Positions 1,018 to 41,210 of a DNA stretch of 42,512 bases are shown here, piece by piece (positions within the stretch are counted from its first letter, which is position 1; each line of letters begins with the position of its first letter). The notes under the pieces are model-generated. The model had not been told where the DNA came from. It made no database searches and saw nothing but the letters and a program-made list of their open reading frames with translations. The translations under genes and the position numbers were made by a program. Origin of the DNA: Octopus sinensis (taxonomy: Eukaryota); NCBI RefSeq assembly GCF_006345805.1, contig NW_021835136.1, forward strand, positions 1 to 42,512, written 5' to 3'.

Positions 1018-1138
1018 ATCGTTTTATAGCATAAAATATCAGCAAAGACGATTCTTGGAGGCTCTTTTTCGATTTTCACACTCAAAGTTTGTTTGTTCTC
1101 TGCTGTTCTATCCTCTGTTCCATTACCAGTACTTGAAC
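936..1138 (-). CDS. Candidate exon, possibly terminal, of the aGPCR-like locus (SSTGNGTEDRTAENKQTLSVKIEKEPPRIVFADILCYKT...)
   Basis: Strong acceptor tttttttcattatgtttccag at 1139; phase 1 frame open to a TAA at 936-938; no good donor seen. Confidence 0.35.
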
Positions 1139-2178: not shown

Positions 2179-2226
2179 TGGAATTGTGTGAATTATTCTG
2201 CCCAGTAGAGTCTGCATCTTCTACTT
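2179..2226 (-). CDS. Copy 1 linker exon 5 (VEDADSTGQNNSHNS), 48 nt, phase 1-1
   Basis: Acceptor ccttattttgtatag; donor gtactt is weak; conserved with 14624-14671. Read-through gives a TAG 11 codons later. Confidence 0.5.
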
Positions 2227-2562
2227 CTATACAAAATAAGGAGAAAACATTTTTGCCCTCGGATAATTGCTATAATTAAAAAGAAACTGAGCAAAGACAA
2301 ACAGTTCCGTAGGACAAAACGGAAAGCGCAAAATAAATGCTGATTTTTGAAATTATCCAAGCTTTGAGAAAATGTAATGAAATAGTTGTATGTATGAGAG
2401 AGAGGGGGGAGAGTCTGTGCGCTTGCGTGCACGCGTGGGTGTCCTAAGGTATCATCCGTTGTGGTTGATGATGACGACAACGACAAAGAGGATGGTATGG
2501 TGATTGATGAAGCTAATTATGACGGTAATGGTGTTAGAAAATGAAGAAACACGATTACTTAC

Positions 2563-2678
2563 TTTCATCAAGCAAATTCATGTTGAGCAATGCCTGGAAT
2601 TGTTCAAAACTTGGGAGATATTGCGCCGCAGTTGACTTTGAACACTTAAAGAGATTAATTGTTTTGTTTCAATTATTT
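2563..2678 (-). CDS. Copy 1 exon 4 (..SVQSQLRRNISQVLNN[F]QALLNMNLLDE), one T missing in a T run
   Basis: Donor gtaagt at 2562; a 42-nt stretch identical to copy 2; 18-nt in-frame indel versus copy 2. Acceptor uncertain (2678 or 2644). Confidence 0.55.
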
Positions 2679-2725
2679 CTATATTCAAATATAGCTTAGG
2701 ATTGGATCATCATAGGTAAAATAAC

Positions 2726-2784
2726 CGCATTCAGTATGGTTGAGAACAGAATTAGTGAAGAAGGCTAGAACTACAAGCGGGTGC
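2726..2784 (-). CDS. Copy 1 exon 3, short form (HPLVVLAFFTNSVLNHTEC)
   Basis: Acceptor ctaacttttag at 2785; frame open; donor gttatt is weak. The upstream long-form acceptor is CAC rather than CAG (2873-2875). Confidence 0.45.
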
Positions 2785-3132
2785 CTAAAAGTTAGTGTTA
2801 AGAACATATTCGTCCAGTACCGTGGCTTGCCCTCTTTAGCATGTAAGAAATCCACATGGTGGTCTTCCCTCCGTGTATAAATTTTTATATACATTTATAT
2901 TATATATATATATATGGTAATTCCTGGTTGGTTTTAAATTGCTTATTAGCACCTTAATTATATATAATCTTCACATTGCCATTTTGTGAAATCAATCACT
3001 CATTTTTATGTCATTCTGAAAGATATTGACAGGCGTGAGCTAACCTCCACAAGCGTAATGGATGTGAGCATTGCTGATGAGTATTAACTTCTTATAAGAA
3101 TTACCATGCTAATCTAATCCATCTGGCTTACC

Positions 3133-6100
3133 GTATTCCTGCTTGCTGAGGACATCTTTGTTGGGGATATGATTCTGCCATTTGATGCGGGGATTTTTCG
3201 GAGGCAGCGCAGGTGAATGAAAGATGTTTAGGTGAGGCTCTTGGTGTGTGTTATAGCGTCCAAGTCTCACTTCCATACAGTAGAGTGCTGAGTAACATGC
3301 AGGTGGTAGATTTCATTTTCGTGGTCTTCATCAGCTTATTGTTGTCCCAAGCCCGTTTGGAGAGTTGGGCCATCGCAGCAGCTGTTTTCCAATGCGTATA
3401 TTGAGCTCAGCGTCAAGGGATAGGTTGTAGGTGACGATAGAGTCCAGATAGGCAAACTTCTCCACCTCTTGTAATCTGTGGTCTCCAATATGTATGTTGG
3501 GATGTCCGATGTAGCCTGACCCATGATGTTGGTCTTCTTAAGGATGATAGCTAAGCCAAAGTCGTTACATGCTTGCTCAAAACAGTCAATGAACCTTTGG
3601 AGGGCTTCTTCTGTGTGTGATTACCAGAGCGGCATCATCAGCAAATAGCATCTCCTTGATCAGGACGTTTCTGATTTTGGTCTTGGCACACAGGCGCGAG
3701 AGATTGAACAGTTCCCGTCACTTCTACTGTGCAGAAAAACACTCCATCATCTGATGTCTGAAAGGCTTGTGAAAGTAAGAGCGAGAAGAAGATGCCAAAA
3801 AATGTAGGAGCGAGGACACAACCTTGCTTTACCCCGTTTTTTATTTGGAAGGCGGCTGATGTTGAACCGTTTGTGCTGTATGGTGCCTTGCATGTCATCA
3901 TGGAAAGACTTGATGATCCTCAGCAGCTTTGGGGACATCCGATTTTTTGGAGCAGGATTAAGAAGCCTGTTCTGCTTACCGAGTCAAAAGCCTTTGTTAG
4001 ATCAATGAAGGCCATATATAATGGCATTTTCTGCTCTCTGGACTCTCCTGAAGTTGGCGTACGGAGAATATCATATCGATAGTTGATCTGCTTCTTCTAA
4101 AGCCACACTGCGATTCCGGATAGATACGAGAAGCAAGTAGTTGTAGCCTGGCCAGGATAACGCGGGCAAAGGTCTTTCCAACAGTGCTTAGAAGAGATAT
4201 ACCACGGTAATTGTTACAATCACCACGGTCACCTTTGTTTTTGAAAAGCGTAATGGTGTTAGCATCCCGCATATCCTGAGGGACTGTACCCTCTTCCCAG
4301 CACTGACACAGAAGCTCATGAAGATGCCGAAGCAGGATGGGGTTTTTACCGGCTTTGATGATATCTGCGGGGGGGTGCCGTCTTTTCCCGGAGACTTAGT
4401 TCTTGCTAGGAAGTTAACAGCCTTGGTGAGCTCTGCTATAGATGGCGGACTGTCAAGTTCGCACATGACTGGCAAGATCTTGAGACTCTCGACTGCACTC
4501 AGCCACTGTAGTCTCCCGTGAGTAGAGATCCTGGTAGTGCTCCACCCATCTATCCATTTGTTGCCTTGATCCGTGATGAGATCTCCAGAGGGGCTGACTT
4601 GGTTGCGGATGGACCGAGGGCCTTCTTCAAACCGGCATACATACATCCCACAGGTGTCGCCACTGTCAGCAGCTGACTGGATACTCTGACAGATTTCCTG
4701 CCAATACCCATTTGCACAGCGTCTGGCTGTCAGTTGGGTTTTATTTCGTGCCTTTCTGAGTTCTTCGAGGGACTTTGTAGAAGATTCACTCTTGTATTGC
4801 ATCAGAGCTGCACACCTTTGCTTCGATAACTGGCTCCAGCTCTGAGAGCCCAGCATTGAACGAATCTGGGTTTACCTTTCTCTCATGCCGAAAGTATCTA
4901 TTGATTCGTATACAAAGCTTCCCTGATATAGTTCCACCTACTTTCAGCAGAGGAGGTTGGGCAGCTACTGAGGGCAACTTTGATAGAAGCAGCAAAACAT
5001 TTTCGCAGTGTAGGTTCCGAGGTTCTGGCAGTGTTAATGCGTGGTCGGCCCACTTTCTTGAAGCGATGGACTTTTTAGGGCAGAATCCTCACCCTACTTC
5101 TAATTAGTGAGTGGTCTGTGTCACAATCCGCGCTGTGGTAACTGCGGGTCAATAGAGTAGAATTCAGAAAGGATCTCCGTGTAATGATGAGATCCAGCTG
5201 ATGAGCAGTGGTGAGATCTTGGATGTCTCCAAGATGCCTTGTGGGAAGGCTTGTTGGTAAAGAATGTGTTTGTGATGCACAGGTTGTGGTATGTGCAGAA
5301 TACGAGTAGTCTCTGACCATTGTCATTCATGTTGCCAATACCAAAGTGTCCAACACAAATGGGCACGAATCATGGTCAGATCCCACGCGAGCGTTAAAAT
5401 CCCCCAGAAGGTAGATATTTTCAGTCGTTGGTATATTTTCTATGACACAGTTGAGATCTTTGTAGAACTGGTACTGGTCTCCTCTGAGCTGTAGAAAGTG
5501 AGAGTAGAGATGCTGAGTAGATGTACTGAGCCAGAAGAAGTCGAGAGGCGCAGTGAGGGGATACGCTCAGTGCCTCCTGATGGTGGTTCTATTGAGGAGA
5601 GTAATGAGTTTCTCACTGCAAAGCCAACGCCATGCTGACGAGGTTCTTCTGGATCGCTTCCTGCCAAAAGGAGGTGAAATCCTGCTCTTTGAGTTTGCCG
5701 TTCGAGGGGAGACTTGTCTCCTGCAGCCCAGCAATATCTATGTTGAGCTCTTTAGTTCACGGTCAATGATGGCCGTTTTCCTTGTGTCTTCAACCCTGAG
5801 TAGATCATCAGATATTCCAGGGCACATGGTCCTGACATTCCAACTTGCCAACCGCACAACTGGTGTTTTCTTGACTTTTAGTTGTTTGCCTGGTGCAGAG
5901 GTTGCAGGCCGCTTTTCAAGTCATACTTTAGCTTCAAGCACCCAATGAAGCAGGCGACCTGTGGCGGGTCAGCACCTTATTAACTGGGGGCTGCCCAGCT
6001 TGAGGTGGGCAGTAGCTAACCAATAGGACACGGAGGTCCCTCCCACCGTCAGAGGTAACCGTAGCGCCAATATTTTACGCCAATCTGAATAGACTTATCA

Positions 6101-6493
6101 CTCGTGACTGTTACCTCCGTGTTGTTTTACAGCTTTTTACAGCAGCACTGAAGTGTCCTCTCCAGTTTTGCGCAAGCCTGGGCTATAGATAAGAAAGTCC
6201 TGGGTAGCCCAATCGTCAGGTTTCCTCTCTCGACCTTGCTGATGTAGTCCAAAGGAGTGCAGTGCATTACGTTTGGCACCAGCTTGGTTGCAGGAGCTGC
6301 CGGAAGAGTGTCGAGTCGAACACTAGACCGCCTTCGGGGCTCCACTCCGGATTTCTTTGAAGGTTGTTTCCGTTCCGTAACCCTGGATAGGGGCCCATAC
6401 CGGGTACTGTCAGCCGGAGCCCGGAACTCGTGTCAGGCAGGGTCGTCACTCCCTGAAGTAGTGAAGAAGTTCGCTACCCACTACCTTTTCAAG
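3133..6493 (-). mobile_element. RTE-clade (BovB-like) LINE: 5' UTR, APE endonuclease and RT, frameshifted, 3' end missing
   Basis: LASWNVRT, ELNIDIAGLQET, DCNNYRGISLLS, YPESQCGFRRSRSTIDMIF, GVKQGCVLAP and FADD motifs; coding stops abruptly at RCLRKI.RIKWQNHIPNKDVLSK. Confidence 0.95.
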
Positions 6494-6513
6494 TAATGTT
6501 AAATTATTATTAG

Positions 6514-6514
<1 letters not shown>

Positions 6515-6567
<53 letters not shown>
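6515..6567. repeat. (TA)n microsatellite at the LINE 5' junction
   Basis: Pure TA run. Confidence 0.95.
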
Positions 6568-6573
<6 letters not shown>

Positions 6574-6789
6574 CACAGTTCTCTCTTTATCTTTATATGG
6601 GTTGGTTTGTCCTTTGTAAATAAAACATTGATAAAAACACTTAAGCATTTCGTCGAAGGTACGAATTAGTATATTGTGGGTCACAAGTAAAACAGTTGAT
6701 TATGGTGACGTCTAATACATGCGATAAAATCGAATGTTTGGAACAAAACAAAATAAATTTGAATAAATGTGTTAGAAGCTTTTGCTTAC

Positions 6790-6841
6790 CCAGGATATTC
6801 AACTCGGAATTTTCCAGTCACGTTAAAAACTCATGCTCCAT
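6790..6841 (-). CDS. Copy 1 exon M (MEHEF[L/F]NVTGKFRVEYPG after restoring one base)
   Basis: Acceptor cttttgcag, donor gtaagc; 52 nt versus 53 nt in copy 2, with the missing base in TTTTTAA. Confidence 0.6.
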
Positions 6842-7187
6842 CTGCAAAAGCCAGATGTGTATATATATATATGCATACATTAAATTCAAGAAACAAGTTT
6901 GATTTAAAAGCTTTGAGAAGTATAAAAAGATACAGATAAGGAAATCATTTTACATATGTATGTATTTATGTGTTTAAGCTGATCAGGCTAAACAAAATAC
7001 TGATCATAACAAAATCGATATCACTATCTACGAAACGTATTGAGCTCACTCACTATTTAAATTGACGTTTTGCATTTCTTGTATAAAATATGCATGTGTG
7101 TGTGTGTGTGAGTGTATGCATGTGTGCGCGTGTTCAGCGCGCGCGTGTGTGTGTGTTCGGAGAAAGAAGAGACAGATATCTACTCAC

Positions 7188-7270
7188 GGCTCTTGATATG
7201 TTCTCAGCAGGTTTTTTATATTCGTTGAAAGATTTTAAAATCAAACGAAATGCGAAGGATTTGGTCCAGC
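7188..7270 (-). CDS. Copy 1 exon A (WTKSFAFRLILKSFNEYKKPAENISRA), SEA-like start
   Basis: Acceptor atcaatccatag, donor gtgagt; 83 nt, phase 1 to 0, frame open; conserved with 18501-18582. Confidence 0.65.
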
Positions 7271-7503
7271 CTATGGATTGATATAGAAATAATTGCTGTA
7301 TTTATAAATGAGACACACGTCATAGATGCACATAAAACCCACATACGTAGATAAAAATATACATTCATAATCACATATACACTTAAAAATACTATAAATA
7401 AATATATTATATATACGAACATACAGACTCACATTAATACATCTGCATCTACATGTATAAACACATATATAAATGCATGTGTACCACATACACAGTTCAT
7501 GTA

Positions 7504-8422: not shown

Positions 8423-8880
8423 TATATATATATACATATAATATACATTTAGAAACATTATTTGCATCTATGTGCACGTACACGTATCCAATATAGGATT
8501 TCATTATAGGGACAGCACTTCTGTGAAACGATCGTAAAAAAGGTTTAAATATTTAATTCAAAACTTATAAACTGTCATATACATTATATATTTATACGTA
8601 TACATATATACATATATTTTTATAAATATTTATATTTATTTATTTATATATTTTTAATACAACCATTTTTTTTCACACGTGTATATCTTTCTGTGAAGTT
8701 TTCTGATATTGAATTCTTAATATTAATAATAACATATTATTTAAAAATATATATAATCGCTCGCATTAAATATATAAATACCTTAATAATATTAACACTT
8801 TGATACAATAGAGCACTCAATATATATTCAGTATGTAATATTCTCATTGAATATATTTGACTAAAGATTCATATATACTC

Positions 8881-9300
8881 TTTACTCTTTTTACTCTTTT
8901 ATTTGTTTCAGTCATTTGACTGTGGCCATGCTGGAGCACCGCGTTTAGTCGAGCAAATCGACCCCAGTACTTATTCTTTGTAAGCCTAGTATTTATTCTA
9001 TCGGTCTCTTTTGCCGAACCGCTAAGTTACAGGGTCGTAAACACACCAGCATCGGTTGTCAAGCGATGTTGAAGGGGGGGCAAAAACAGACACAAACATA
9101 TACACACATACACACACATAGATATATATACATATACATATATACGACAGGCTTCTTTCAATTTCCGTCTACCAAATCCACTCACAAGGCTTTGGTCGGC
9201 CTGAGGTTATAGCAGAAGACACTTGCCCAAGGTACCACGCAGTGGGACTGAACCCGGGACCATATGGTTCGTAAGCAATCTACTTACCACACACCCACTA
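8881..9300 (-). mobile_element. tRNA-head SINE (octopus family 2), near full length
   Basis: Reverse complement has the head gtgtggtaag..ggttcagtcccactgcgtgg, the middle gtgagtggatttggtagacggaaa and the tail gctccagcatggcc..aaagagtaaa. Confidence 0.9.
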
Positions 9301-9303
9301 CTA

Positions 9304-9361
<58 letters not shown>

Positions 9362-9651
9362 TATATGCAACCATGCCCACACATGCAGACATATGTATTA
9401 GAATATGATTGTTCCTTTCCAGCAACACAAAACCATCCAATGGCCATTTTTATGGGTTTCGAAACAAAAAGCCTACAGTTACAAGGAAAATGACAATAAT
9501 AAAAGCACAGTAAAATAGAACGCAAAAGAAATATCTAAAGCGGTTTTATTAATTTGATTACCCTGTGTACGAGGGATACAATGTGTGCAAGGAAGAGGGA
9601 TATTAGCGTTTGGAAGGAGAATCGCTTTCAATTGAAATTTCAGGAAGAACC

Positions 9652-9930
9652 TGCGTGGTACTTGGGCAAGTGTCTTTCTACTTAAGCCTCGGACCGACCA
9701 AAACATTGTGAGTGGATTTGGTAGACGGAAACTGAAAGAAGCCTGTCGTATATATGTATATGTATATATATCTATGTGTGTGTATGTGTGTATGTTTGTG
9801 TCTGTTTTTGTCCCCCCCCTCCAACATCGCTTGACAACCGATGCTGGTGTGTTTACGACCCTGTAACTTAGCGGTTCGGCAAAAGAGACCGATAGAATAA
9901 ATACTAGGCTTACAAAGAATAAGTACTGGG
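9652..9930 (+). mobile_element. Family 2 SINE, 5'-truncated
   Basis: Same middle and 3' motifs as 8881-9300, opposite orientation. Confidence 0.85.
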
Positions 9931-11860: not shown

Positions 11861-12003
11861 CATCATCAATGCCTTTGCTCTGTTCTGCATTGTAACATTG
11901 AGACATGTCTGGTTCTTGCCAGATACCAGTAAACGGTGAACACTTTTGTGATGACAGGTTTTGACTTGATGCCATTTCTGGATGCCCCATCGTTCTGGAA
12001 GAA
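11861..12003 (-). CDS. Adhesion-GPCR HormR (HRM) domain exon 2 (SSRTMGHPEMASSQNLSSQKCSPFTGIWQEPDMSQCYNAEQSKGIDD)
   Basis: Acceptor tttattttttcag, donor gtgagc; 143 nt, phase 2 to 1; C...G.W..PD.S.C motif typical of HormR domains. Confidence 0.85.
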
Positions 12004-12791
12004 CTGAAAAAATAAATGTTAAATATTGTCAGTCGAGTTTATTCATTCTGAGGAGAATTTCATCAGTCTCAGAGGAATATAAGAAACCTTCGAACTGGTC
12101 GTGATTTGAACTCATAATTTAGTGAAAGAAGGATAAATGGTGTCTTGCATTTGGGGGAGAAATCTATTATTTACTCCTGACCCCTATCCTCAAAACTAAT
12201 GTCAAATATTTTCTAACTAGAGTTCAGATATAAAAACAATATTCCTGCATCTGTTTTTATTTACAATAATTTCTTGTTTTTATGATTATTCAATACAAGA
12301 TTAGTTGGAACGGTGTAAGTGATGCAGAATTAAGGAGCCAAGTTGTTAGTTCAAGTTGAATGGGGGAATTAGTTGCTAATATTTCGCCACCATAGACATC
12401 AGTAGCAACAGCGGCAGCAATGGATTTATGTATATTTTCCTACATATGCACAGATTTGAGTGATTCCACCAGTTGGTCTTGTCTTAAAACTAATAAAGCT
12501 CAGCCTCTGGGAGGAACAATTTAGATGCTTAACCTGTGGAATGACGTGGTAGAAATGAGAGAAGAGAGACCGTATTATATAGTCTGTGATGAGTGAAATC
12601 CCAGGATGACCATCATGTACTAGCAAGATATATAGCTCTACAGTAATCATAAAATTGAATAAATAGTATTAGCCTGAAACCACAAGAAATCACTGATAGT
12701 TCTATTGGCTGTATCTAGGTATGTGCTTTCTTTGCTACAATTATTTTGTGAAATTCTGGAACTTACAAGAATCTTTAAATCTTTGAATAAT

Positions 12792-13165
12792 GCTGATTTC
12801 AAATTTTGGCAGCTATTTGGGGGGGGGTAGTTCGATACATAGACCCCAGTGGTACTTATTTTATCGATCCCGTAAGGGTAAAAGACAAAGTCGACCCTGG
12901 TGGCATTTGATCTCAGAATGTAAAGTCAGAAGAAATGCTGCTAAGCATTTTGTCCGGCATGGTAACGATTCCGCTAGCTCTCCACCATAAAGCCTTGTCT
13001 AATATTGGTTTCAAATTTTGGCACAAGGCCAGCAATTTCAGGGGAAGGGATAAGTCGTTTACACCAACCCCAGTGCTCAATTGGTATTTATTTCATCGAA
13101 CCGAAAAAATTAAAGGCAAAGTCGACCTTAGCGGAATTTGAACTCAGAACATAAAAACGAATGAA
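12792..13165 (-). mobile_element. Two tandem family 3 SINE copies (about 12792-12990 and 13005-13165)
   Basis: Repeated ttcaaattttggca..cccagtg..aaagtcgacc..atttga(a)ctcagaa blocks, similar to 11010-11196. Confidence 0.8.
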
Positions 13166-13405
13166 ATGAAAGCTTTGTATAATATTGGCGACAAAGCAAA
13201 CCTAGATAGTTAGGACAAGGCTAAATTATATCAAATAATGTATAAAATGTAAAAATGCTGGGACAAGAGATTGCAACCGATAGACGTTTAATTCTATCTT
13301 GTTAATCTATAAACCTGTTATTGCTCTACCAAGTAACATTCTCTCACAATAGGATGGCGCTGAAAACTTCAAACTTTGAGTAGAAATAAATCAATACAAA
13401 CGAAC

Positions 13406-13520
13406 CAATGCCTGGTGGCTACATTTCCATGACATGGGATCTCCGCAGTAGTTCCTATTTTTGTCATTGGCCAAGAGAAAGCTCGATTGTTAGTTGATGT
13501 TGTGCTTTCATCACAAACCA
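13406..13520 (-). CDS. Adhesion-GPCR HormR domain exon 1 (VCDESTTSTNNRAFSWPMTKIGTTAEIPCHGNVATRH[C])
   Basis: Acceptor ttggttctttttcag, donor gttcgt; 115 nt, phase 1 to 2. The terminal TG joins the T of the 12003 exon to make the conserved Cys. C...WP.T..G.TA..PC...ATR.C is the HormR pattern. Confidence 0.88.
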
Positions 13521-13556
13521 CTGAAAAAGAACCAAAACATGGATATAAGAGAAGCT

Positions 13557-13575
13557 AGTAGTAGTAGTAGTAGTG

Positions 13576-13625
<50 letters not shown>

Positions 13626-13626
13626 T

Positions 13627-13669
<43 letters not shown>

Positions 13670-13680
13670 CAGCAGCAGCA
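13557..13680. repeat. (TAG)n/(CAG)n microsatellite
   Basis: About 40 triplets, agt repeats grading into gca. Confidence 0.95.
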
Positions 13681-13861
13681 GTTAATGTTGGAAATAAATT
13701 GTTTGGACCACCTGCTGGCTGATTTGAGGACAATGATACATGAAGTGTTGCAAACATATACGGAGAGCATATATATTTATTCAAAATAGACAGATTTCTA
13801 GTTTTTCATTTAGTAGTTTGTAAAGAGATAAATGATTTAGAAATGAATTACAATCCCTTAC

Positions 13862-13956
13862 AAGACAAGGACCCAACCAGGCTCCATGCAATTCTTGGAA
13901 GTGTAGTCTATTCTTAACTAAAATGGCGACAATATGATTTTCTCCATATTCTTGCT
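13862..13956 (-). CDS. Candidate 95-nt exon (QEYGENHIVAILVKNRLHF...)
   Basis: Acceptor atatttgaacag, donor gtaagg, frame open; one base short of a symmetric phase 1-1 exon. Confidence 0.25.
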
Positions 13957-14623
13957 CTGTTCAAATATTTGAGAAAAATTACATTAAAGTGTCCTACTTA
14001 TTAAAATTCTATTTCTTTATTTATGCAGCTGAAGATGGCATTGCATTTAAATTGATGTAATTTTTGTATTGTTCAATTAAATTTAGCCGATTGAAACTGC
14101 ATAACTACTTGAGATCCTGTAGATTATATATATATATATTTTTTCTTATATATTCTTAAAAAACAATAAATAAAATAGAAATAGAGGTGTGTGCATATGT
14201 ATATATATATATTTTATATTTTCTCGAGCAATATATAACTGGTTACGGGATATGACTACTCAGAATGCTAGTCTGTTTCGCGGCCTCTAGTGTTGAATTT
14301 CGTCAATATATTGATCACTCTTTAGACATACTGACCGGAAGCGCAAAACCTAATGTACGCTAGAAATGGGTAGATGTTATATTGATTTGGCGATGGTGAA
14401 ATGAAATGAATGGAAACGAAGTGAAAATATATCCTTTTCCGGCAATGGGATATGATTTGTTCCTCTCTTATATCCCTTAGACACTGTTTAAATCGTATGA
14501 GCTGTGTGTATCTATCGATCCTAATGTAAAAATTAACTTGATCACTTCGTACGAAATGAATTTTCGCTGAGGAAAATTATTTGCAGCACTAAATAGTTTT
14601 CCTGTTTGAATTAAAGCAAGTAC

Positions 14624-14671
14624 TGGAATTGTTTGAATTTTTCTGCCCATTAGAGTCTGCATCTTCTACTT
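14624..14671 (-). CDS. Copy 2 linker exon 5 (VEDADSNGQKNSNNS), 48 nt, phase 1-1
   Basis: Acceptor ttctaattttgtatag, weak donor gtactt; in frame with exon 4 and with the HormR exon at 13520. Confidence 0.55.
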
Positions 14672-14836
14672 CTATACAAAATTAGAAGAAAACATTTTTG
14701 CCCTCGGTTAATTGGTATAATTAAAAAGAAACTGAGCAAAGACAAACAGTTCCGTAGTGACAAGAAACGGAAAAGCGCAAAATAAAATGCTTTTTTTTGA
14801 AATTATCCAAGCGTTGAGAAAATGTAAATAAATAGT

Positions 14837-14869
<33 letters not shown>

Positions 14870-15001
14870 GGGGGAAAGAGTCTGTGTGCTTGGTATCATC
14901 TACTGTGGTTGATGATGACGACAACGACTAAGAGGTTGGTGATTGATGAAGCTAATTATGACGGTAATGATGATTAAATTAATAAGAAACACGATACTTA
15001 C

Positions 15002-15118
15002 TTTCATCAATGAATTTCATGTGGCTTTTCTTAACTCCTAAGTTAAGCAATTCCTGGAAATTGTTCAAAACTTGGGAGATATTGCGCCGCAGTTGACTTT
15101 CAGTCATTTCGCTAAATA
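15002..15118 (-). CDS. Copy 2 exon 4 (FSEMTESQLRRNISQVLNNFQELLNLGVKKSHMKFIDE)
   Basis: Donor gtaagt; frame open; phase-1 acceptor tttactgtatag gives 117 nt. Alternative AGs at 15112 and 15157. Confidence 0.65.
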
Positions 15119-15238
15119 CTATACAGTAAATAGCAAATATTTTATTTCTGTTTGAGCTGAAATAAAAAATAAATACATACATGTATGTCGGTATGTATGT
15201 ATGTATGTAGCTAGCTAGCTAGCTAGAAATATACATAC

Positions 15239-15285
<47 letters not shown>

Positions 15286-15633
15286 TCGTTTAAAAGCTGC
15301 CCTGTTAATCCTTGGGTCCAACAATGACACCATGCATTGAGTACATATTAAATTTCATGAAACATGAATATTTCTCAAGCAATGAACAATTTTCATCAAA
15401 GCAATGATATAATTTGTCGACTCGGAACTTATTGCAAAGCTTCATGATAAACAACAGTACCACCACCATCGCCACCATATCTGCAATACACACGCCATCC
15501 AGACTTCTGACGCCATCACCATCAATACTTTTCATCACTTTCCGCTCCACCACCATCACCACTGTCTTTCACATCGCTTTCTATCAGTATATTCAAACAT
15601 AGCTTAGGATTGAATCATCATAGCTAAAATAAC

Positions 15634-15747
15634 CGCATTCAGTATGGTTGTGAACAGAATTAGTGAAGGAGGCTCGAACTACAAGCGGGTGACTAAAAGT
15701 TGGTCTTAAGAATATATTCGTCCAATGCACATGAAGGTCTTCGCTCC
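15634..15747 (-). CDS. Copy 2 exon 3 (SEDLHVHWTNIFLRPTFSHPLVVRASFTNSVHNHTEC); internal alternative acceptor at 15693
   Basis: Acceptor gatttatgcag; frame open; 33-nt in-frame indel versus copy 1; donor gttatt is weak. Confidence 0.5.
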
Positions 15748-15794
15748 CTGCATAAATCTTTGAATACACTTTATATATGTATTTATACATATAC

Positions 15795-16165
15795 AGGAGT
15801 GGCTGTGTGGTAAGTAGCTTGCTAACCAACCACATGGTTCCGGGTTCAGTCCCACTGCGTGGCATCTTGGGCTAGTGTCTTCTGCTATAGCTCCGGGCCG
15901 ACCAATGCCTTGTGAGTGGATTTGGTAGACGGAAACTGAAAGAAGCCTGTCGTATATATGTATATATATGTGTGTGTGTGTAGTGTGTGTGTTTGTGTGT
16001 CTGTGTTTGTCTCCCAAGCATGGCTGTGTGTACTCCCCGTCACTTAGCGGTTCGGCAAAAGAGACTGGGCTTACAAAGAATAAGTCCCGGGTCGATTTGC
16101 TCGATTAAAGGTGGTGCTCCAGCATGGCCGCAGTCAAATGACTGAAACAAGTAAAAGAGTGAAAA
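15795..16165 (+). mobile_element. Family 2 SINE, near full length, absent from copy 1
   Basis: Head ggagtggctgtgtggtaagtagc..ggttcagtccc and tail actgaaacaagtaaaagag. Confidence 0.92.
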
Positions 16166-16192
16166 AAGTGAGAAAGATACATATATATATAA

Positions 16193-16258
<66 letters not shown>

Positions 16259-16470
16259 CCTGGTTGGTTTTAAAATGTGTGTTAGCTACCTTCAATATTT
16301 TATAATCTTCACATTGCCATTTTGTGAAATCAGTCCCTAATTCCTATGGCATTCTCAATGATACTGAGAGGCGTGAGTTAGCCTCCACCAGCCGTAATGG
16401 AGTGAGCATTGCTGATGAGTATTAACTTCCTATAAGAAATTACCATGCTAATCTAATCCATCTGGCTTAC

Positions 16471-16490
16471 CGTGGGGAATGTTCTCCCCA
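16471..16490 (-). CDS. 20-nt microexon (GENIPH), phase 2 to 1
   Basis: Acceptor ctgtttgcattgacag, donor gtaagc; links exon M (phase 2) to the long exon 3 (phase 1) in frame. Confidence 0.5.
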
Positions 16491-17003
16491 CTGTCAATGC
16501 AAACAGACCATATGTCTTTTTGTGGCTAAGGAGTCTATGACTAATATTTCTAATAATACTGGTGCTCACTGCACTCTTTTCACACTTAGTGACTGTGAAT
16601 TATTTCCTTGTTGGTTTCAAATTGCCGATAGCCACCACAATTTATATATATACACACCCATATATGTGTGTGTATATATATGTGGTATATATATATGTGT
16701 GATGTATATGTATGTTTATATACATATATATAAATACAGCAATTTAATAAATAAAACATATGCATACATACATACATATATGTACATACCTACATCTATA
16801 TGTATATATACATACATATGAGTACAGGACACCACAAAAAAGCGTAGAACACAACGAGAAAACATAAAATCAAACTAGGAAAGGACTCTTTTCAACAACG
16901 AAAAACAGAGTACAAGACAAACAATACAAGGAACATTCCCCTTCTTCAGATGCCCCTGTTTCGACTCAATGCGTATGTATGTATATATATGTATATATAT
17001 ATT

Positions 17004-17072
<69 letters not shown>

Positions 17073-17154
17073 ATATATTATATATATATATACATATATT
17101 ATATATAGATATATATATTATGTATATATATATATGTATATATATATATACATA

Positions 17155-17193
<39 letters not shown>

Positions 17194-17437
17194 TATATAT
17201 ATCTATATCTACAACATATATATACAGTTCTCTCTGTATCTTTATATGGTTTTTTGTCCTTTGTATAATAAAACATGGATAAACACTTAAACATTTCATT
17301 GAATGTATGAATTAGTATATTGTGGGTCACAAGTACAACACTGTTGATTATTGTGACGTATAATACATGCGATAAAATCGAATGTTTGGAACAAAAGCAA
17401 ATAAATTTGAATAAATGTGTTAGAAGCATTTGCTTAC

Positions 17438-17490
17438 CCACAGTCTTCAACTCTAAATGTTCCCGTCACGGTTGAAAGGTCATGCTCCAT
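17438..17490 (-). CDS. Copy 2 exon M (MEHDLSTVTGTFRVEDC[G]), 53 nt
   Basis: Acceptor cttttgcag, donor gtaagc, frame open. Confidence 0.65.
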
Positions 17491-17502
17491 CTGCAAAAGC
17501 CG

Positions 17503-17552
<50 letters not shown>

Positions 17553-17617
17553 CATTAAATGAAAGAAACTGAGTTTGATTTTAAATCGTTGAGATGTATT
17601 GAAAAATAGATAAAGAA

Positions 17618-17930
17618 ATAATTTTATTCTGAAACGCAGGATAATGCTAATGATATAACGTGAACCGGATGAAATATCCATAATTTGCAGAAAAATCTGT
17701 CGGCGGCCAGCTATGTGACTACAACTCACACCCCTGTGATTACGCTTCAAGTGCTTTACCATTAAGCTAAACTGCGCGAACGACAAATACTTCTGCAAAG
17801 TTAGGCTATATACATCTAGCTTTATAAGACGCGTAATCTGGCCGCCGACAGAGTTTTCGGCAACAGGTGAATACGTTATCCTGTTCATGCTATACTATTA
17901 GCATTATCCTGCGTTTGAGAATATAATTAT
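17618..17930. mobile_element. MITE or fold-back element, ~310 bp
   Basis: Terminal inverted repeat ataatt(t/a)tattct(g/c)aaacgcaggataatgctaat, plus an inner inverted pair tctgtcggcggccag / ctggccgccgacaga; not present in copy 1. Confidence 0.8.
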
Positions 17931-18500
17931 ACATAAATATATTAGCTTGACACTCGGTAAAGTGGGGGAAATGAGAGGGTTTTTAATGTTCCGAGCATAT
18001 CTCTTTTTCAGAAAGGAAAACGAAAATGTTGAGAAGAAAAATATTACCAAAAGGAAGTGTGTGATTACATATGGTTTTATGTGTGTGTGTGGTGTGTGTT
18101 GGGTGTGTGTGTGTGGTGTGTGTAAACACAAGATTAGTGAATATTTGAGTAGGATTTTATTTACTGTCAGAATCGGAAATTATAAGACGGATATATTAAG
18201 ACAAAATAGTGGATAGAACAGTCTTTTTATTGACCAGAAAAAATTCAGTAAGTTAAAAAAAGAAAGTTTTATGTAATAGTTACTATCAGTAAATGGAGTT
18301 GAATGTCTCTGAATTTCATGAAACCTCACTATTTATTTGACGTTTCACATTTTTTTATAAAAATATGCATGTGTGTGTGTGTATGTGTGCGTGTGAGAGT
18401 GTGTATGTGTATGCATGTGTGCGCATGTTCAGTGCATATGTGTGCGTGCACGCGCGTCTGTGTACGGAGAAAGAGAGAGAGAGGGCAGATATCTACTCAC

Positions 18501-18582
18501 GGCTCTTGATATGTTCTCAGCGGGATTTTATATTCGTTGAACTTTTTAAAAATCAAACGAAATACGAGGGATTTTGTCCAGC
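18501..18582 (-). CDS. Copy 2 exon A (WTKSLVFRLIFKKFNEYK[N/I]PAENISRA after restoring one base)
   Basis: Acceptor atcaatccatag, donor gtgagt; 82 nt versus 83 nt in copy 1, with the missing base in AAAATCCC. Confidence 0.6.
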
Positions 18583-19107: not shown

Positions 19108-19232
19108 TTATCATTCCCTTTCTTCCTGTCGCTCTCTTCGTGTATCGGCTATCAATGCCTGCACATGGATGATTGGTTCCATACATCGTTAGGACCTTTC
19201 TTGACTTCCTGTCCAACTCCTTTAGCTTTCCT
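19105..19232 (-). mobile_element. Short R4/Dong-type LINE fragment
   Basis: LKELDRKSRKVLTMYG.HP.A.ID.RYTKR, the same segment as 10620-10760. Confidence 0.75.
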
Positions 19233-19234
19233 TG

Positions 19235-19700
19235 CGTGCCATTCGCCCCTCGGCCTCTTTTTGATCCACGACTGTTGTTCGGTAATGAGACGAGTTGCGG
19301 AATGCGTGCCTCACAAAAGGCGACCACACCTGTTCACCGTCGTCTACATAGAGCCGGAGGTGTCGCAGTCTCAGCGCGTGTCCGTGTCTGCGTATCATCA
19401 ACCATGGCACACCCAGTCCTCCTTTTAACGGGTGTTGACAGCAAATGGATCGCCTGACCATCGGGACGCATCCTTTCCACAAGAAGCGGAAGAGAATGCG
19501 TTGTAGTTTGGTGATGGTAGGGTCGGGACAAGGTACGACGGTCAGGCGGTAGTAGATGATGGACGCGACGTACATGTTCGCCACCTCCGCCCGAACTTTT
19601 AGGGACAGATTCCTCTCGGCCCATTGCTGGGCGAGAGTGACCACCCTACTCGTTATCTCGTTCCAGTTCTTCTCCATTTGGAGGTCGGGTATTCTGTTGT
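19235..19700 (-). mobile_element. Tx1/L1-clade LINE fragment (post-RT region)
   Basis: WAERNLSLKVRAEVANMYVASIIYY..LQRILFRFLWKG..HPLKGGLGVP. Confidence 0.85.
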
Positions 19701-20020
19701 GCATGGGTGACTGCCGGTCATCCATAAACAAACTTGCCCGGATATGTAACTTGGTGGGGAACTTTCTAGGTGCAATCTCCTGGTCAATCATTACAAAAGA
19801 GGATCTATAAAAGCATGCACTACCCTACCTCCTTCTCTTAGATCATTCCCTTATCCCCTAGCATGACACTGACCCAACCCCCACAGGACTTGTAGTTATG
19901 CGACCTGCATGGCAACCTCAATAGTCGGCTAGTATGATAAAAACACTGATCCCATGCTGTGAATTGGTTGGTGTTTGGAAGGGAATCTAACTACAAATAG
20001 GAGACCAAAGTAGACATTTA
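19700..20020 (+). repeat. Interspersed repeat, second copy at ~22222-22550
   Basis: Shared gcatgggtgactgccggtcatcc..aactttctagg..gaccaaag(t/c)agacatttata. Confidence 0.75.
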
Positions 20021-20059
20021 TATATATATATATATAATATGTATGTGTGTGTGTGTGTG

Positions 20060-20265
20060 TGTCTGTGTGCCTTTGTTTGTCCCCACAACATCGCTTGATA
20101 ACCGATGCCGGTGTGTTTACGACCCCGTTACTTAGCGTTTCGGCAAAATGAGAGCGATTGAATAAGTAATAGGCTTACAAAAAATAACTACTGCGGTCGT
20201 TTGCCTGTCCAAATGCGGTACTGCAGCATGGCAACAGTCAAATGACTGAAACAAGTAAAGCAATA
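20060..20265 (+). mobile_element. Family 2 SINE, 3' half
   Basis: caacatcgcttga(t)aaccgatg..agcatggc..gactgaaacaagtaaa. Confidence 0.8.
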
Positions 20266-20270
20266 AAGAC

Positions 20271-20369
<99 letters not shown>

Positions 20370-22605: not shown

Positions 22606-25600
22606 GACCCTCGATTTTGCCTCCTTTTAACTGAAAGAAGGGTTCATATTTTTAGTAAAATTTTTGACATATTGTGTACATGCTGATTATATTGGAATTC
22701 TTTTAGAAAAAGTTTTTCCTAGAGGGGGGGGGAGAATTTCAAAAAATTCCAATATCGGCATTTTTTGGACGAAGAAAGCTTTGATGAAATAATGAAAGAA
22801 ATATGCAATCAATCTACTAATCTACTACCACACCCACCCATCCACACACATGCATATATACTCTTTACTCTGTACTGTTTTACTTGTTTTAGGTCATTTG
22901 ATTGTGGCCATGCTGGAGCACCGCCTTTAGACAGGCAAATCGACCCAGGGCTTATTTTTTTGTAAACCTATTACTTATTCAATCACCTCATTTTCCCGAA
23001 CCGCTAAGTTACGGCGTCGTAAAGACACCAGCATCGTTTGTCAAGCGATGTTGTGGGAACAAACAGAGATACACAAACATATACACACACATATGTATGT
23101 ATGTATGTGTGTATGTATGTATGTATGTATGTATGTATGTATGTATGTATGTATGTAGGAAGGAGGAACTCTTGAGAGTCAACGGCCATCCAATAAATGT
23201 TTAATGTTTTTTTTCTTTTTTTCTTTTTCTTTTTGTTAATGCTTAAGGCTGTATCATGGGCGGGGACATAGAAATAACCGGACTGAATACCCGATCGCGC
23301 GGTTAAACCATTGGGAGTGAAGGACTCCTAGCCTTTGTTAGGGCATCCTTCTAGAAGGTAACTCAGGTAACTGGGATAACTGCGACATAAAACCTGCGGC
23401 TCAGTGGTTACCGATGATGTTGACCGATGATGTCTTTTCGGATTATGGCTTCTGTTGCTTAGTGTGTGGGATTGACTCAGTGCACAGTCTTTCCTCACTT
23501 TGAAAATATCTTCGTGCACAGGCATTGCACGAAAACAACATTGGATTGATTAAAGTGAGTAACTAATTCATGATTGTTGATAGTGCTGTGAGTCTCAACT
23601 GAATGGCTGGCTGTAGCCTTAAAAAGCAAAAATCAATGATGTACCAAAACAGTATAAAAATAAATGGCAGTAAGGACTCTGGAACCACATCAGCTGAAAG
23701 AGTCTGGCTCGGCAGGGGTTCCAGAGCATCACAGTCTGAACCCGGCCGTCATCATGCTACTGTGATAGAACCAAAGAAAATAATGAATATTGGCTGTTGG
23801 AATATACGGACACTGCTTGACCATAAGTCCTCTGAATGTCCTGAAAGAAGGACTGCGCTTGTTGCGAAGGAGCTTCAACGCTATGATCTTGACATCGTTG
23901 CTTTATCTGAGACGAGATTACCTGGAGATGGTCATCTTACAGAATCTTGTGGAAAATATACATTCTTTTGGAAAGGGAGAGATGAAGAGTTTAGAGGAGA
24001 AGCTGGAGTGGCATTTGCTGTTAAGACTACTCTTGTGGACAAGTTGGAAGAATTCCCAATCGAAATTAACGATCGTCTTATGTCCATGAGAATTCCTTTG
24101 GCTAAAGGAAATTATATGACCTTGGTGAGTGTGTAAGCTCCAACTATGTGCTATACTGATGACGAAAAACTTTCTTTCTACCATGCTTTGAAGGGTATTA
24201 TAAGAAATATCCCTCGGCAGACAAAGTCATCGTACTGGGTGACTTTAATGCTAGAGTGGGTAGGGATTTTAACACATGGACTGTAATTGGAAAGCATGGG
24301 GTGGGGAAGTGTAATAGTAATGACATGCTTTTGCTGCAGATGTGTGAAGAGCTGAGTCTGTGTGTTACCAATACCATGTTTCAACCAAAGAATAAGCTTA
24401 GGACTAAAGAATGGCATATTCTGGATTACATCCTAGTTAGGGTGCGTGACAGACAGGATGTACAGTGTGATCGTGTTCTTCGTGGAGCTGAGTGTTGGAC
24501 TGACCACCGCCTAGTACGTGCAACAGTAAAAGACTGAATGTTGGTATAATAGTGTGAAGAGAACTTTACGAGAGGAAATGAATGCTGCAGATATTGGGGA
24601 AGATTGGCCGAACCTCAAAAAGTCAGTTTATGATATAGGCAGGAAAGTTCTGGGATTGATACAAAGAAAGCATCAAGATTGGTTCAAAGAAAATGATGAA
24701 CATATAGATGATTTATTGGATGATAAAAGGCGTACATTGTCACGCTATTTGTCAGCAAAATCACACGAAAGGGAAGTGTTGCATAGGGAACTCAAGGACG
24801 TAAAATCACGTGTGAGGCAAAGGCTCTCAGAGATGAGGGATACGTGGTGGAGTAAGAAGGCTGACGAGATACAGGCGGCATGAGATTCCAATAACACAAA
24901 GTTGCTGTATGGTCTCTTGCGAGAAGTTTATGGACCGACGTCTTCCCTGATGACACCAATTCGAAGCAGGGATGGTAAAGAAGTTCTTCATGATTCACAA
25001 GGAATTCTGCGAAGGTGGCAAGAACACTTTGATGAACTTTTGAATCAACAGTCTGTAGTTAGTGAGGATGTTCTCAATCTCATCCCTGGATTGCCTGTGA
25101 AGGCAGCACTCGCAGAACAACGAAAGTTGGAAGACGTTGCAATGGCTGTCTCAAGGTTGAATAATGGGAAGTCTCCGGGTATGGATGGCATACAAGCGAA
25201 GTTGTTACAGCATGGTGGTGAGAAAATTCTGCAGAAACTTCACTCTTTGTTTGGTAAGGTATAGACTGGAGAGATGCTGTAATGGTGGCTCTGTATAAGG
25301 GAAAGGGCAGCGGGAATGGTTGTGGTAATTATAGGGGAGTATCATTGCTGTCTGCTGTAGGAAAGGTTTTATGCAAGATACTTCTGGATCGTCTGCTGAA
25401 ATACATTGCAGATTGTGTTCTTCCAGAAAGTCAATCTGGCTTTCGTGTGGGACGTGGCACTGCTGGTATGATATTTTCAGCTAGACAGCTTCAGGAAAAG
25501 TGTGTGGAACAGGGTCTTGATTTGTATCAGCTTTTTGTCGATCTGACAAAAGCCTTTGATACCGTCAATAGAAAAGCATTGTGGAAAGTCCTCCAGAAAT

Positions 25601-41196: not shown

Positions 41197-41210
41197 ACTG
41201 AGATATATTT

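What the first reader, a model, noticed from the sequence alone, without database searches (positions are those of the whole stretch)
11861..18582. Cryptic adhesion-GPCR ectodomain (SEA-like + HormR) built from tiny exons missed by the ORF track
Seen: eight minus-strand exons with GT-AG boundaries chain in one frame once one base is restored in exon A: WTKSLVFRLIF..AENISRA-MEHDLSTVTGTFRVEDCG-GENIPHG-..HPLVVRASF..-..ESQLRRNISQVLNNFQELL..-linker-VCDES..WPMTKIGTTAEIPCHGNVATRHC-..KCSPFTGIWQEPDMSQC. Established: the Cys/Trp spacing is the HormR domain of adhesion/secretin GPCRs, and SEA-HormR-GAIN order occurs in ADGRG6/GPR126. Inference: exons A to 4 follow the strand-helix-strand-strand-helix pattern of a degenerate SEA fold. 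In-frame 33-nt and 18-nt indels between the copies support coding.
Basis: partly seen in the sequence, partly recalled or inferred. Interest (0 to 1): 0.7.

Follow-up and report, generated by a model that had tools for sequence, protein, structure and literature searches.

The report
Octopus adhesion-GPCR-derived ectodomain gene copy
The interval holds five, not eight, real small exons of an already annotated octopus gene; they encode a SEA-like fold plus a hormone-receptor (HormR) domain from an octopus-specific adhesion-GPCR expansion, but this copy has no receptor part and carries frameshifts, so it is an ordinary, probably decaying, family member.

Summary
The window is octopus DNA. All have GT-AG boundaries and all appear in annotated Octopus sinensis, O. 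vulgaris and O. bimaculoides proteins. One of these, CAJ1099352.1 "adhesion GPCR G6-like isoform X2", is 100% identical over four exons. The GENIPHG exon, the HPLVVRASF exon and the "linker" are unsupported, and the 33-nt and 18-nt indels were not found. Exons e7+e8 give a borderline Pfam HRM hit (E=1.4e-5); relatives continue from this domain into GAIN/GPS/7TM. Exons A+e2+e5 fold confidently (pLDDT 89) as a beta-alpha-beta-beta-alpha-beta ferredoxin-like sandwich, the SEA fold class, directly before HormR as in ADGRG6. SEA-specific evidence is weak: Pfam SEA E=0.007, and only for a distant relative. The window has no GAIN or 7TM exons. Instead e8 splices into a second, truncated copy of the module (7270-2563) and a short terminal exon. 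The upstream LRR/Ly6-like exons are also absent, and three exons carry 1-bp deletions. This is a known, recently amplified, receptor-less gene family, and this copy is a fragment or pseudogene, or comes from an error-rich assembly. Low novelty.

The parts
18501..18582 (-). Exon A: strand 1 and the start of helix 1 of the SEA-like module (G-WTKSLVFRLIFKKFNEYKIP / AENISRA). It carries a 1-nt deletion relative to all relatives.
   Evidence: Canonical AG/GTGAGT sites. Homologues P0004 and P0032 read it through in one frame. It is 82 nt, against 83 nt in copy 2.
17438..17490 (-). Exon e2: end of helix 1 and strand 2 (MEHDLSTVTGTFRVEDCG). It ends in phase 2 at the conserved Gly.
   Evidence: Sites ttttgcag / gtaagc. 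It matches P0001, P0004 and P0032.
15002..15156 (-). Exon e5x: strand 3, helix 2 and strand 4 (SNRNKIFAIYCIVFSEMTESQLRRNISQVLNNFQELLNLGVKKSHMKFIDE).
   Evidence: 100% identical to P0032 and 79-91% to P0001, P0004 and P0005. It is the only e2-e5-e7 join that reproduces the homologues.
13406..13520 (-). Exon e7: first half of HormR (M-VCDESTTSTNNRAFSWPMTKIGTTAEIPCHGNVATRH-C).
   Evidence: Pfam HRM on e7+e8 gives E=1.4e-5. All 115 nt are identical to O. sinensis L002.
11861..12003 (-). Exon e8: second half of HormR and the first residues of the GAIN lead-in helix (SSRTMG...KCSPFTGIWQEPDMSQCYNAEQSKGIDD). It ends in phase 1.
   Evidence: All 143 nt are identical to L001 and L002. In paralogues P0001, P0030 and P0031 this exon encodes 9 more residues (TTQGLKDIE) at this point.
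7188..7270 (-). Exon A' of the second, truncated module copy (G-WTKSFAFRLILKSFNEYKKPAENISRA). It is intact and phase-compatible with e8.
   Evidence: 100% identical to P0008 and P0032. The e8-to-A' junction is present in P0001, P0002, P0008, P0030, P0031 and P0032.
6790..6841 (-). Exon e2' (MEHEFLT/VTGKFRVEYPG). A 1-nt deletion creates an immediate TGA.
   Evidence: The tblastn match splits into two frames at 6821; L001 is intact at this point.
2563..2644 (-). Exon e5' (VQSQLRRNISQVLN/QFQALLNMNLLDE). It uses the short acceptor and so lacks strand 3. It has a 21-nt in-frame deletion and a 1-nt deletion.
1081..1138 (-). Terminal exon (S-SSTGNGTEDRTAE...). A 5-nt insertion and a 1-nt deletion remove the family's ...AETNF stop, so in this reading the frame runs on to 936.
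   Evidence: ORF 936-1148.
16471..16490 (-).
   Evidence: Absent from all homologues. It is 20 nt and breaks the frame when used together with exon 4.
15634..15692 (-). It lies inside a 137-bp intronic block that is 93% identical between the copies.
   Evidence: Absent from all homologues. All 3 differences between the copies are non-synonymous, and the conserved block extends beyond the putative exon on both sides.

Best explanation
The interval is the 5' two-thirds of a minus-strand octopus gene. The gene descends from the octopus-specific, LRR-bearing adhesion-GPCR expansion, whose 7TM is closest to ADGRG6/G2.

Shown:
- Exons A, e2 and e5x encode a module of about 98 residues that folds as a ferredoxin-like beta-alpha-beta-beta-alpha-beta sandwich (SEA-like).
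- Exons e7 and e8 encode the HormR domain. In full-length relatives this domain leads into GAIN, GPS and the 7TM.
- In this subfamily the receptor half has been lost. Exon e8 splices, in phase, into a tandem, truncated second copy of the module exons (A', e2', e5') and then a short terminal exon.
- The intact paralogue is therefore a receptor-less ectodomain protein: signal peptide, LRRs, LRRCT, a Ly6/uPAR-like Cys-rich domain (my reading of the cysteine pattern), SEA-like module, HormR, half module.

Inferred for this copy:
- It is a partial segmental duplicate.
- The Ly6-like and LRR exons lie 1.5 kb upstream of exon A in the intact O. sinensis locus. Here they are missing from the 24 kb upstream, where transposon sequence begins about 650 bp from exon A.
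- Three exons carry 1-nt deletions and the terminal exon has lost its stop.
- As sequenced, the copy cannot make a secreted ectodomain or a receptor. It is most likely a gene fragment or young pseudogene that may still be transcribed and spliced.
For: Gene model:
- The best protein hits are all Octopus. They reproduce the exon chain A-e2-e5x-e7-e8-A'-e2'-e5'-terminal.
- O. vulgaris CAJ1099352.1 (P0032) is 100% identical over e5x, e7, e8 and A'.
- All junctions are canonical and phase-compatible.

HormR:
- Pfam HRM gives E=1.4e-5 on the window peptide.
- HRM gives sub-threshold hits (E 6e-4 to 0.06) in six of the eight relatives scanned and in two of the larger relatives.
- The pattern of 4 Cys and 2 Trp, including the WP motif, is invariant across the family.

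Family context:
- Relatives with the same module carry GPS and 7tm_2, and some carry a Death domain (P0037, P0039, P0043, P0047).
- Their closest solved 7TMs are ADGRG6 and ADGRG2.
- The family matches the 'group 3' octopus-specific aGPCR expansion, which has LRR and Death domains (PMC6408891).

Module fold:
- AlphaFold2 gives pLDDT 88.9 and pTM 0.81, with elements E3-12, H22-33, E39-46, E51-60, H65-77, E92-95.
- Foldseek returns only ferredoxin-like sandwiches.

No receptor part:
- The GAIN/GPS parts of P0013, P0014 and P0010-15 find nothing in the window at E<1.

Truncation and damage:
- P0030 residues 1-555 and P0004 residues 1-175 have no match in the window.
- In the intact locus L003 the Ly6-like exon is 1.5 kb from exon A.
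- Homology upstream of exon A stops at about 19232, next to an ORF at 19222-19791 that reads like a retroelement (no Pfam hit).
- There are 1-nt deletions in A, e2' and e5', and a changed stop.
Against: - The frameshifts may be consensus errors rather than biology. Against O. sinensis L001, 1-bp indels are nearly half as frequent as substitutions in non-coding DNA.
- All three exon lesions are single-base deletions. By eye, each sits next to a repeated base.
- The near-identical P0032 reads straight through places where the window has frame changes.
- Exons e7+e8 (258 nt) are identical to L002, while the flanking introns differ by about 3.7%. This suggests constraint, or recent gene conversion.
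- Octopus introns can exceed 24 kb, so 5' exons could lie outside the window.
- No RNA data could be consulted.
Confidence: 0.6

Rival explanations
1. This is an intact, functional gene for a secreted, receptor-less ectodomain protein (LRR, Ly6-like domain, SEA-like module, HormR, half module). It would act as a soluble binding or decoy partner of the membrane receptors. The 1-nt deletions are assembly errors, and the signal-peptide and LRR exons lie more than 24 kb upstream.
For: - Intact paralogues with this architecture, a signal-peptide-like N-terminus and the conserved terminal exon exist at several loci in two species (P0030, P0031, P0001).
- The HormR exons show no nucleotide change against L002, despite about 3.7% intron divergence.
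- The window has an indel-rich but substitution-poor difference profile against relatives and against P0032.
Against: - The upstream exons are 1.5 kb away in the intact locus but absent from 24 kb here, with transposon sequence at the break.
- The 5-nt insertion that destroys the family stop codon is unlikely to be a consensus error.
- The only near-identical annotated model (P0032) is a chimera that starts in an N-rich low-complexity ORF and ends in ankyrin repeats. It is not an LRR protein.
Confidence: 0.3
2. One reading: these exons are the N-terminal ectodomain of a complete adhesion GPCR, whose GAIN and 7TM exons lie further to the left.
For: - Full-length relatives with module, HormR, GAIN, GPS and 7tm_2 exist (P0037, P0039, P0043, P0047).
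- Exon e8 ends in the first residues of the GAIN lead-in helix.
Against: - No GAIN, GPS or 7TM similarity anywhere in the 11.8 kb to the left.
- That space is occupied by the second module copy and a terminal exon.
- Six independent annotated proteins splice e8 to A'.
Confidence: 0.07
3. This is not a gene at all: the open frames and GT-AG pairs arise by chance in repeat-rich intronic DNA.
For: The exons are tiny. The two intra-window copies are no more than slightly better conserved in exons (88-93%) than in introns (82-87%).
Against: - There are protein-level matches down to E=2e-109 to models from three species, and profile matches to full receptors.
- The translated product gives a confident fold prediction.
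- It also gives an HRM profile hit.
Confidence: 0.02

Closest known systems
Annotated Octopus proteins: CAJ1099352.1 'adhesion G-protein coupled receptor G6-like isoform X2' (O. vulgaris); LOC115226146, LOC115226217 and LOC115230264 (O. sinensis); CAI9744517.1 (844 aa)
   Same: They share the same exons and splice junctions, and the same e8-to-A' join. Identity over e5x, e7, e8 and A' is 100% to CAJ1099352.1, and 77-97% overall to the O. sinensis models.
   Different: The window copy has 1-nt deletions in three exons, an altered stop and no upstream LRR/Ly6-like exons. CAJ1099352.1 has different first and last exons (an N-rich ORF and ankyrin repeats).
Octopus-specific adhesion-GPCR expansion 'group 3' (Ritschard et al. 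2019, PMC6408891)
   Same: Full-length relatives of the module carry LRR, GPS, 7tm_2 and in one case a Death domain. These are exactly the domain set reported for group 3. They occur in tandem clusters.
   Different: That paper selected genes by their 7TM. The receptor-less paralogues and the module between the Cys-rich domain and HormR are not described there.
ADGRG6/GPR126 (CUB-PTX-SEA-HormR-GAIN-7TM; Leon et al. 2020, PMC6954182)
   Different: The octopus family has LRR, LRRCT and a Cys-rich domain instead of CUB-PTX. There is no furin or GSVVV cleavage motif in the beta2-beta3 loop. This locus has no GAIN or 7TM.
ADGRA2/3 (GPR124/125: LRR-LRRCT-Ig-HormR-GAIN-7TM)
   Same: It has an N-terminal LRR/LRRCT followed by HormR and GAIN. 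The Pfam family PF26588 hits relatives, and UniRef names one of them 'ADGRA2/3 GAIN domain-containing protein'. One relative is named 'A2-like'.
   Different: Between LRRCT and HormR there is a Cys-rich domain plus an alpha/beta module instead of an Ig domain. The 7TM scores best against G-subfamily structures.
SEA domain (Pfam PF01390; MUC1, Notch, enterokinase)
   Same: It has the same beta-alpha-beta-beta-alpha-beta sandwich and a conserved Gly at the end of strand 2. A distant family member (P0047) aligns to 3-100 of 106 profile positions at E=0.007.
   Different: The octopus modules give no profile hit. No SEA entry appears in the top 50 Foldseek matches. There is no G-SVVV motif.

Membership tests
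Adhesion GPCR (class B2) | Seven-transmembrane domain (Pfam 7tm_2) | tested here: not met
   tblastn with relatives that reach the GPS and the start of the 7TM (P0013, P0014) finds only the HormR exons in the window at E<1. Full-length relatives with 7tm_2 do exist elsewhere.
Adhesion GPCR (class B2) | GAIN domain with GPS motif | tested here: not met
   The GAIN/GPS portions of P0011-P0015 find no match in the window. Exon e8 encodes only the first few residues of the GAIN lead-in helix.
Adhesion GPCR (class B2) | Descent from an aGPCR ectodomain (homology of the exons to bona fide receptors) | tested here: met
   A module profile hits proteins that carry GPS and 7tm_2 at E=1e-28 to 5e-4. The HormR exons are 59-82% identical to relatives that carry GPS or continue into the GAIN region (P0010-P0015).
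HormR / HRM domain (PF02793) | Profile score at or above the curated threshold | tested here: inconclusive
   The score is 25.8 bits against a cut-off of 26.2, with E=1.4e-5, covering profile positions 7-64 of 66. Eight relatives across searches give E between 6e-4 and 0.06.
HormR / HRM domain (PF02793) | Conserved Cys and Trp framework | tested here: met
   C2, W16-P17, C29, C38, W66 and C74 are invariant or nearly so across 10 diverse members. That this spacing is the HormR pattern rests on my own knowledge.
HormR / HRM domain (PF02793) | HormR three-dimensional fold | tested here: inconclusive
   The AlphaFold2 model of this part has pLDDT below 50. A profile search of PDB sequences finds nothing.
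SEA domain | Ferredoxin-like beta-alpha-beta-beta-alpha-beta sandwich of about 100 residues | tested here: met
   The model has pLDDT 88.9 and pTM 0.81 with the element order E-H-E-E-H-E. Foldseek neighbours are ferredoxin-fold proteins, with E about 4e-3 and TM up to 0.6.
SEA domain | Sequence-profile match to PF01390 | tested here: inconclusive
   The window and octopus modules give no hit. The positionally equivalent module of distant relative P0047 gives E=0.007 and 16.9 bits (cut-off 26.4) over profile positions 3-100 of 106.
SEA domain | SEA structures retrieved as the nearest structural neighbours | tested here: not met
   No SEA-containing entry appears among the top 50 PDB matches for either model. 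A direct superposition on 6V55 or 2ACM could not be run.
SEA domain | Cleavage motif (G-SVVV or furin site) in the beta2-beta3 loop; this is not universal among SEA domains | tested here: not met
   The loop reads CG-SNRNK-IFAIY. The Gly is conserved, but it is followed by a variable loop of 4-6 residues.
SEA domain | Position directly N-terminal to HormR, as in ADGRG6 | tested here: met
   The module ends one residue before the first HormR Cys in all members. The ADGRG6 domain order is taken from PMC6954182.
Octopus receptor-less ectodomain paralogues (the LOC115226146 type) | e8 spliced to a second truncated module, followed by the terminal exon SSTGNGTEDRTAE | tested here: met
   All these exons are present, colinear and phase-compatible at 7270-1081. 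The window is colinear with the intact locus L003 at 87-92% identity.
Octopus receptor-less ectodomain paralogues (the LOC115226146 type) | Uninterrupted reading frame and upstream signal-peptide, LRR and Ly6-like exons | tested here: not met
   There are three 1-nt deletions and a lost stop codon. No match to residues 1-555 of P0030 exists anywhere in the window.

The most novel reading that the evidence does not exclude
The module of about 98 residues is a true but sequence-cryptic SEA domain, shared by the whole octopus LRR-type adhesion-GPCR expansion. That would tie the family to an ADGRG6-like SEA-HormR-GAIN core. In addition, the repeatedly duplicated receptor-less paralogues (LRR, Ly6-like domain, SEA, HormR, half SEA) would be expressed, secreted proteins. 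They would act as soluble competitors or ligands for their membrane-bound relatives in the octopus peripheral nervous system.
Probability: 0.25. Interest if true: 0.45.

Novelty: already known. Interest (0 to 1): 0.2.

Why it matters
- The scan did pick out real micro-exons from raw sequence and named the right superfamily. However, the locus is already in public annotation under that same name, and the parent family is a published octopus-specific expansion.
- The part that may be new is the domain reading. A confidently folded ferredoxin-like (SEA-type) module sits between a Cys-rich domain and HormR in these receptors.
- There is also a subfamily that has lost GAIN and 7TM and is being copied around the genome.
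- If those copies are expressed, they would be a natural example of soluble adhesion-GPCR ectodomains. This particular copy, however, looks damaged.

Tried and rejected
1. I enumerated every canonical AG/GT boundary around the stated peptides (480 combinations) and none is open with both small exons. Either one alone can be joined in frame through an alternative acceptor at 15118, but no homologue uses it.
2. Exon-specific conservation of HPLVVRASF. The 93% block extends beyond the putative exon, and its three differences are all non-synonymous.
3. A second HormR copy or GAIN/7TM exons in the window: none found.
4. SEA by sequence. Pfam on the window peptide and on 16 family modules gave one weak hit, for the distant relative only. 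A profile search of PDB sequences found nothing relevant. phmmer of the P0047 module plus HormR against PDB found nothing.
5. SEA by structure. Two Foldseek searches against PDB returned only generic ferredoxin-fold neighbours.
6. HormR by PDB profile search: no hit. HormR by AlphaFold2: low confidence.
7. A third homologue search with the wider module alignment returned fewer proteins and no non-octopus bridge.
The 95%-identical P0004 module, or P0001, was used as the lead sequence instead.
9. A look-up of the P0004 locus was not on record.
10. tRNA scan of the window: none found.

Full report
**What the sequence is.**
- The window is AT-rich, microsatellite- and transposon-laden animal DNA.
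- A protein search with the spliced peptide returned only Octopus proteins (O. sinensis, O. vulgaris, O. bimaculoides), with the best E=2e-109.
- One O. vulgaris entry, CAJ1099352.1 'adhesion G-protein coupled receptor G6-like isoform X2' (P0032), is 100% identical to the window over four exons.

**Checking the exons.**
On the minus strand they are A 18582-18501, e2 17490-17438, e5 (true limits 15156-15002), e7 13520-13406 and e8 12003-11861.
- Each has an AG acceptor behind a pyrimidine tract and a GT donor. The phases fit: e2 ends with 2 nt, e5x with 1, e7 with 2 and e8 with 1.
- The resulting peptide matches the annotated proteins junction by junction.
- The two smallest exons, GENIPHG (16490-16471) and HPLVVRASF (15692-15634), occur in none of the roughly 50 related proteins collected.
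- None of 480 canonical boundary combinations keeps both in frame.
- The HPLVVRASF stretch lies in a 137-bp block that is 93% identical between the two copies. The block extends beyond the putative exon, and its three differences are all non-synonymous.
- No linker exon is needed. The last base of e5x plus the first two of e7 make the Met of ...FIDE-M-VCDES.
- The claimed 33-nt and 18-nt in-frame indels between copies are not there. I find one 21-nt in-frame deletion and three 1-nt deletions.

**The second copy, and where the gene goes.**
- The window holds a tandem segmental duplication: 14125-18725 matches 1669-7415 at about 82%, introns included.
- The HormR exons occur only once.
- Exon e8 ends in phase 1, and exon A' (7270-7188) begins with two bases that complete the codon.
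- Six annotated proteins (P0001, P0002, P0008, P0030, P0031, P0032) splice e8 to A'.
- After A' come e2' (6841-6790), a short e5' (2644-2563) that lacks the third strand, and a terminal exon (from 1138) encoding SSTGNGTEDRTAE.
- The GAIN/GPS portions of relatives find nothing in the window. The expected receptor exons are therefore not to the left; the reading frame ends there.

**What the exons encode.**
- Exons e7+e8 give a Pfam HRM match at E=1.4e-5 and 25.8 bits, against a curated cut-off of 26.2.
- Eight relatives give weaker HRM hits. A framework of four Cys and two Trp is conserved across the family.
- In relatives this domain is followed by GAIN, GPS and 7tm_2.
- Structure prediction of this part was poor (pLDDT below 50), and a profile search of PDB sequences was empty.
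- HormR is therefore supported by profile and context, not by structure.
- Exons A+e2+e5x form a module of about 98 residues. Modelled on the 95%-identical P0004 sequence with 16 diverse family members, it gives pLDDT 88.9 and pTM 0.81, with topology strand-helix-strand-strand-helix-strand.
- Foldseek finds only ferredoxin-like sandwiches (E about 4e-3 at best) and no SEA entry in the top 50.
- The octopus module has the same fold class and the same position. The family's 7TM is closest to ADGRG6 and ADGRG2 among solved structures.
- Sequence evidence for SEA is thin. There is no hit for the octopus modules.
- Pfam SEA gives E=0.007 over nearly the full profile for the equivalent module of a distant relative, P0047.
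- The beta2-beta3 loop keeps a conserved Gly but has no G-SVVV or furin motif.
- I rate true SEA homology at roughly even odds. 'SEA-like fold' is safe.

**Family context.**
- A profile of the module searched against 1.8 billion representatives found 26 proteins at E of 0.001 or less. All the named ones are from Octopus.
- Several are full receptors with LRRs, the module, HormR, GPS and 7tm_2, and one has a C-terminal Death domain.
- This is the domain set of the octopus-specific adhesion-GPCR expansion 'group 3' of Ritschard et al. 2019. That group is reported as tandemly clustered, enriched in axial nerve cord, suckers and skin, and showing signs of positive selection (PMC6408891).
- The receptor-less architecture is intact in O. 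vulgaris CAI9744517.1 (P0030, 844 aa). It has a signal-peptide-like N-terminus, LRRs, LRRCT, a Cys-rich domain ending CCVGHLCN (Ly6/uPAR-like by my reading), the module, HormR, a half module and then a stop.

**State of this copy.**
- The window is colinear with the intact O. sinensis locus L003 at 87-92% identity from about 650 bp upstream of exon A to the terminal exon.
- In L003 the Ly6-like exon is only 1.5 kb upstream of exon A.
- In the window the homology stops at about 19232, next to an ORF (19222-19791, minus strand) that reads like a retroelement but has no Pfam hit. No LRR or Ly6-like exon is found in the remaining 23 kb.
- Exon A, e2' and e5' each lack one base relative to every relative.
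- The terminal exon has a 5-nt insertion that removes the family stop codon.
- Taken at face value, this is a 5'-truncated, frameshifted duplicate.

**The caveat on sequence quality.**
- Against O. sinensis L001, non-coding DNA shows about 2% substitutions but also about 1% single-base indels. That ratio is too high for ordinary divergence.
- The near-identical P0032 reads through sites where the window changes frame at least six times in 450 nt.
- Some or all of the 1-nt deletions may therefore be consensus errors in the window's assembly.
- The 258 nt of the HormR exons are identical to L002, while the flanking introns differ by about 3.7%. This points to constraint or recent gene conversion.

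**Verdict.**
- Novelty is low because the gene and its family are already annotated and published.
- The modest new point is the confidently folded SEA-type module, and the existence of an amplified receptor-less subfamily.

Noticed in passing
window 23603-26590 (+), 37051-40000 (+), 3134-6500 (-): Three degenerate LINE-type retroelements with fragmented ORFs. Pfam hits in the two plus-strand copies are Exo_endo_phos E=4.8e-8 and RVT_1 E=3.3e-14 (first copy) and Exo_endo_phos_2 E=1.3e-6 (second copy). Those two copies are close duplicates about 13.4 kb apart. The minus-strand one has no Pfam hit and is called a LINE from its ORF translations; it sits in the e2'/e5' intron and is shared with O. 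sinensis scaffold VCDQ01005698.1.
   Followed up: partly
window 17626-18325, with inverted repeat arms at 17618-17710 and 17838-17930: An insertion of about 600 bp is present in the A/e2 intron of copy 1 only; the equivalent stretch in copy 2 is 97 bp (6952-7049). It carries a 93-bp inverted repeat at 82% identity, which looks like a MITE.
   Followed up: no
window 15772-16184; also 8871-9327, 9651-9930, 20023-20358 and 41012-41404: A dispersed SINE-like repeat of about 400 bp occurs in both orientations at 74-80% identity. ARAGORN finds no intact tRNA gene in the window.
   Followed up: partly
window 31547-31994 (-): An Asn-rich, low-complexity ORF serves as the first coding exon of the O. 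vulgaris model CAJ1099352.1. In the window it shows at least six frame changes and two stop codons but almost no substitutions. This suggests either an indel-error-rich assembly or a dubious annotated exon.
   Followed up: partly
window 13545-13700: An (ACT)n/(CTG)n trinucleotide microsatellite of about 150 nt ends roughly 25 nt before the e7 acceptor.
   Followed up: no
window 1081-1138, and on to 936: The terminal exon has a 5-nt insertion and a 1-nt deletion relative to three O. sinensis loci. This replaces the conserved ...AETNF stop with a read-through of about 50 codons.
   Followed up: yes
L003 (O. sinensis CM016887.1, 3173187-3207506) and L002 (918928-960673): At least three loci on one 17-Mb O. 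sinensis scaffold, plus an unplaced scaffold, carry the same e5x-e7-e8-A'-e2'-e5'-terminal unit at 87-97% identity to the window. The unit is being copied as a block. L002 has an assembly gap (Ns) exactly at the e5x acceptor.
   Followed up: partly
relatives P0039 and P0051 (O. bimaculoides): Full-length receptors of this family end in a cytoplasmic Death domain (Pfam E=3.3e-6) after a long Ser/Thr/Gln-rich repeat. This is an unusual tail for an adhesion GPCR and was already noted once by Ritschard et al.
   Followed up: no
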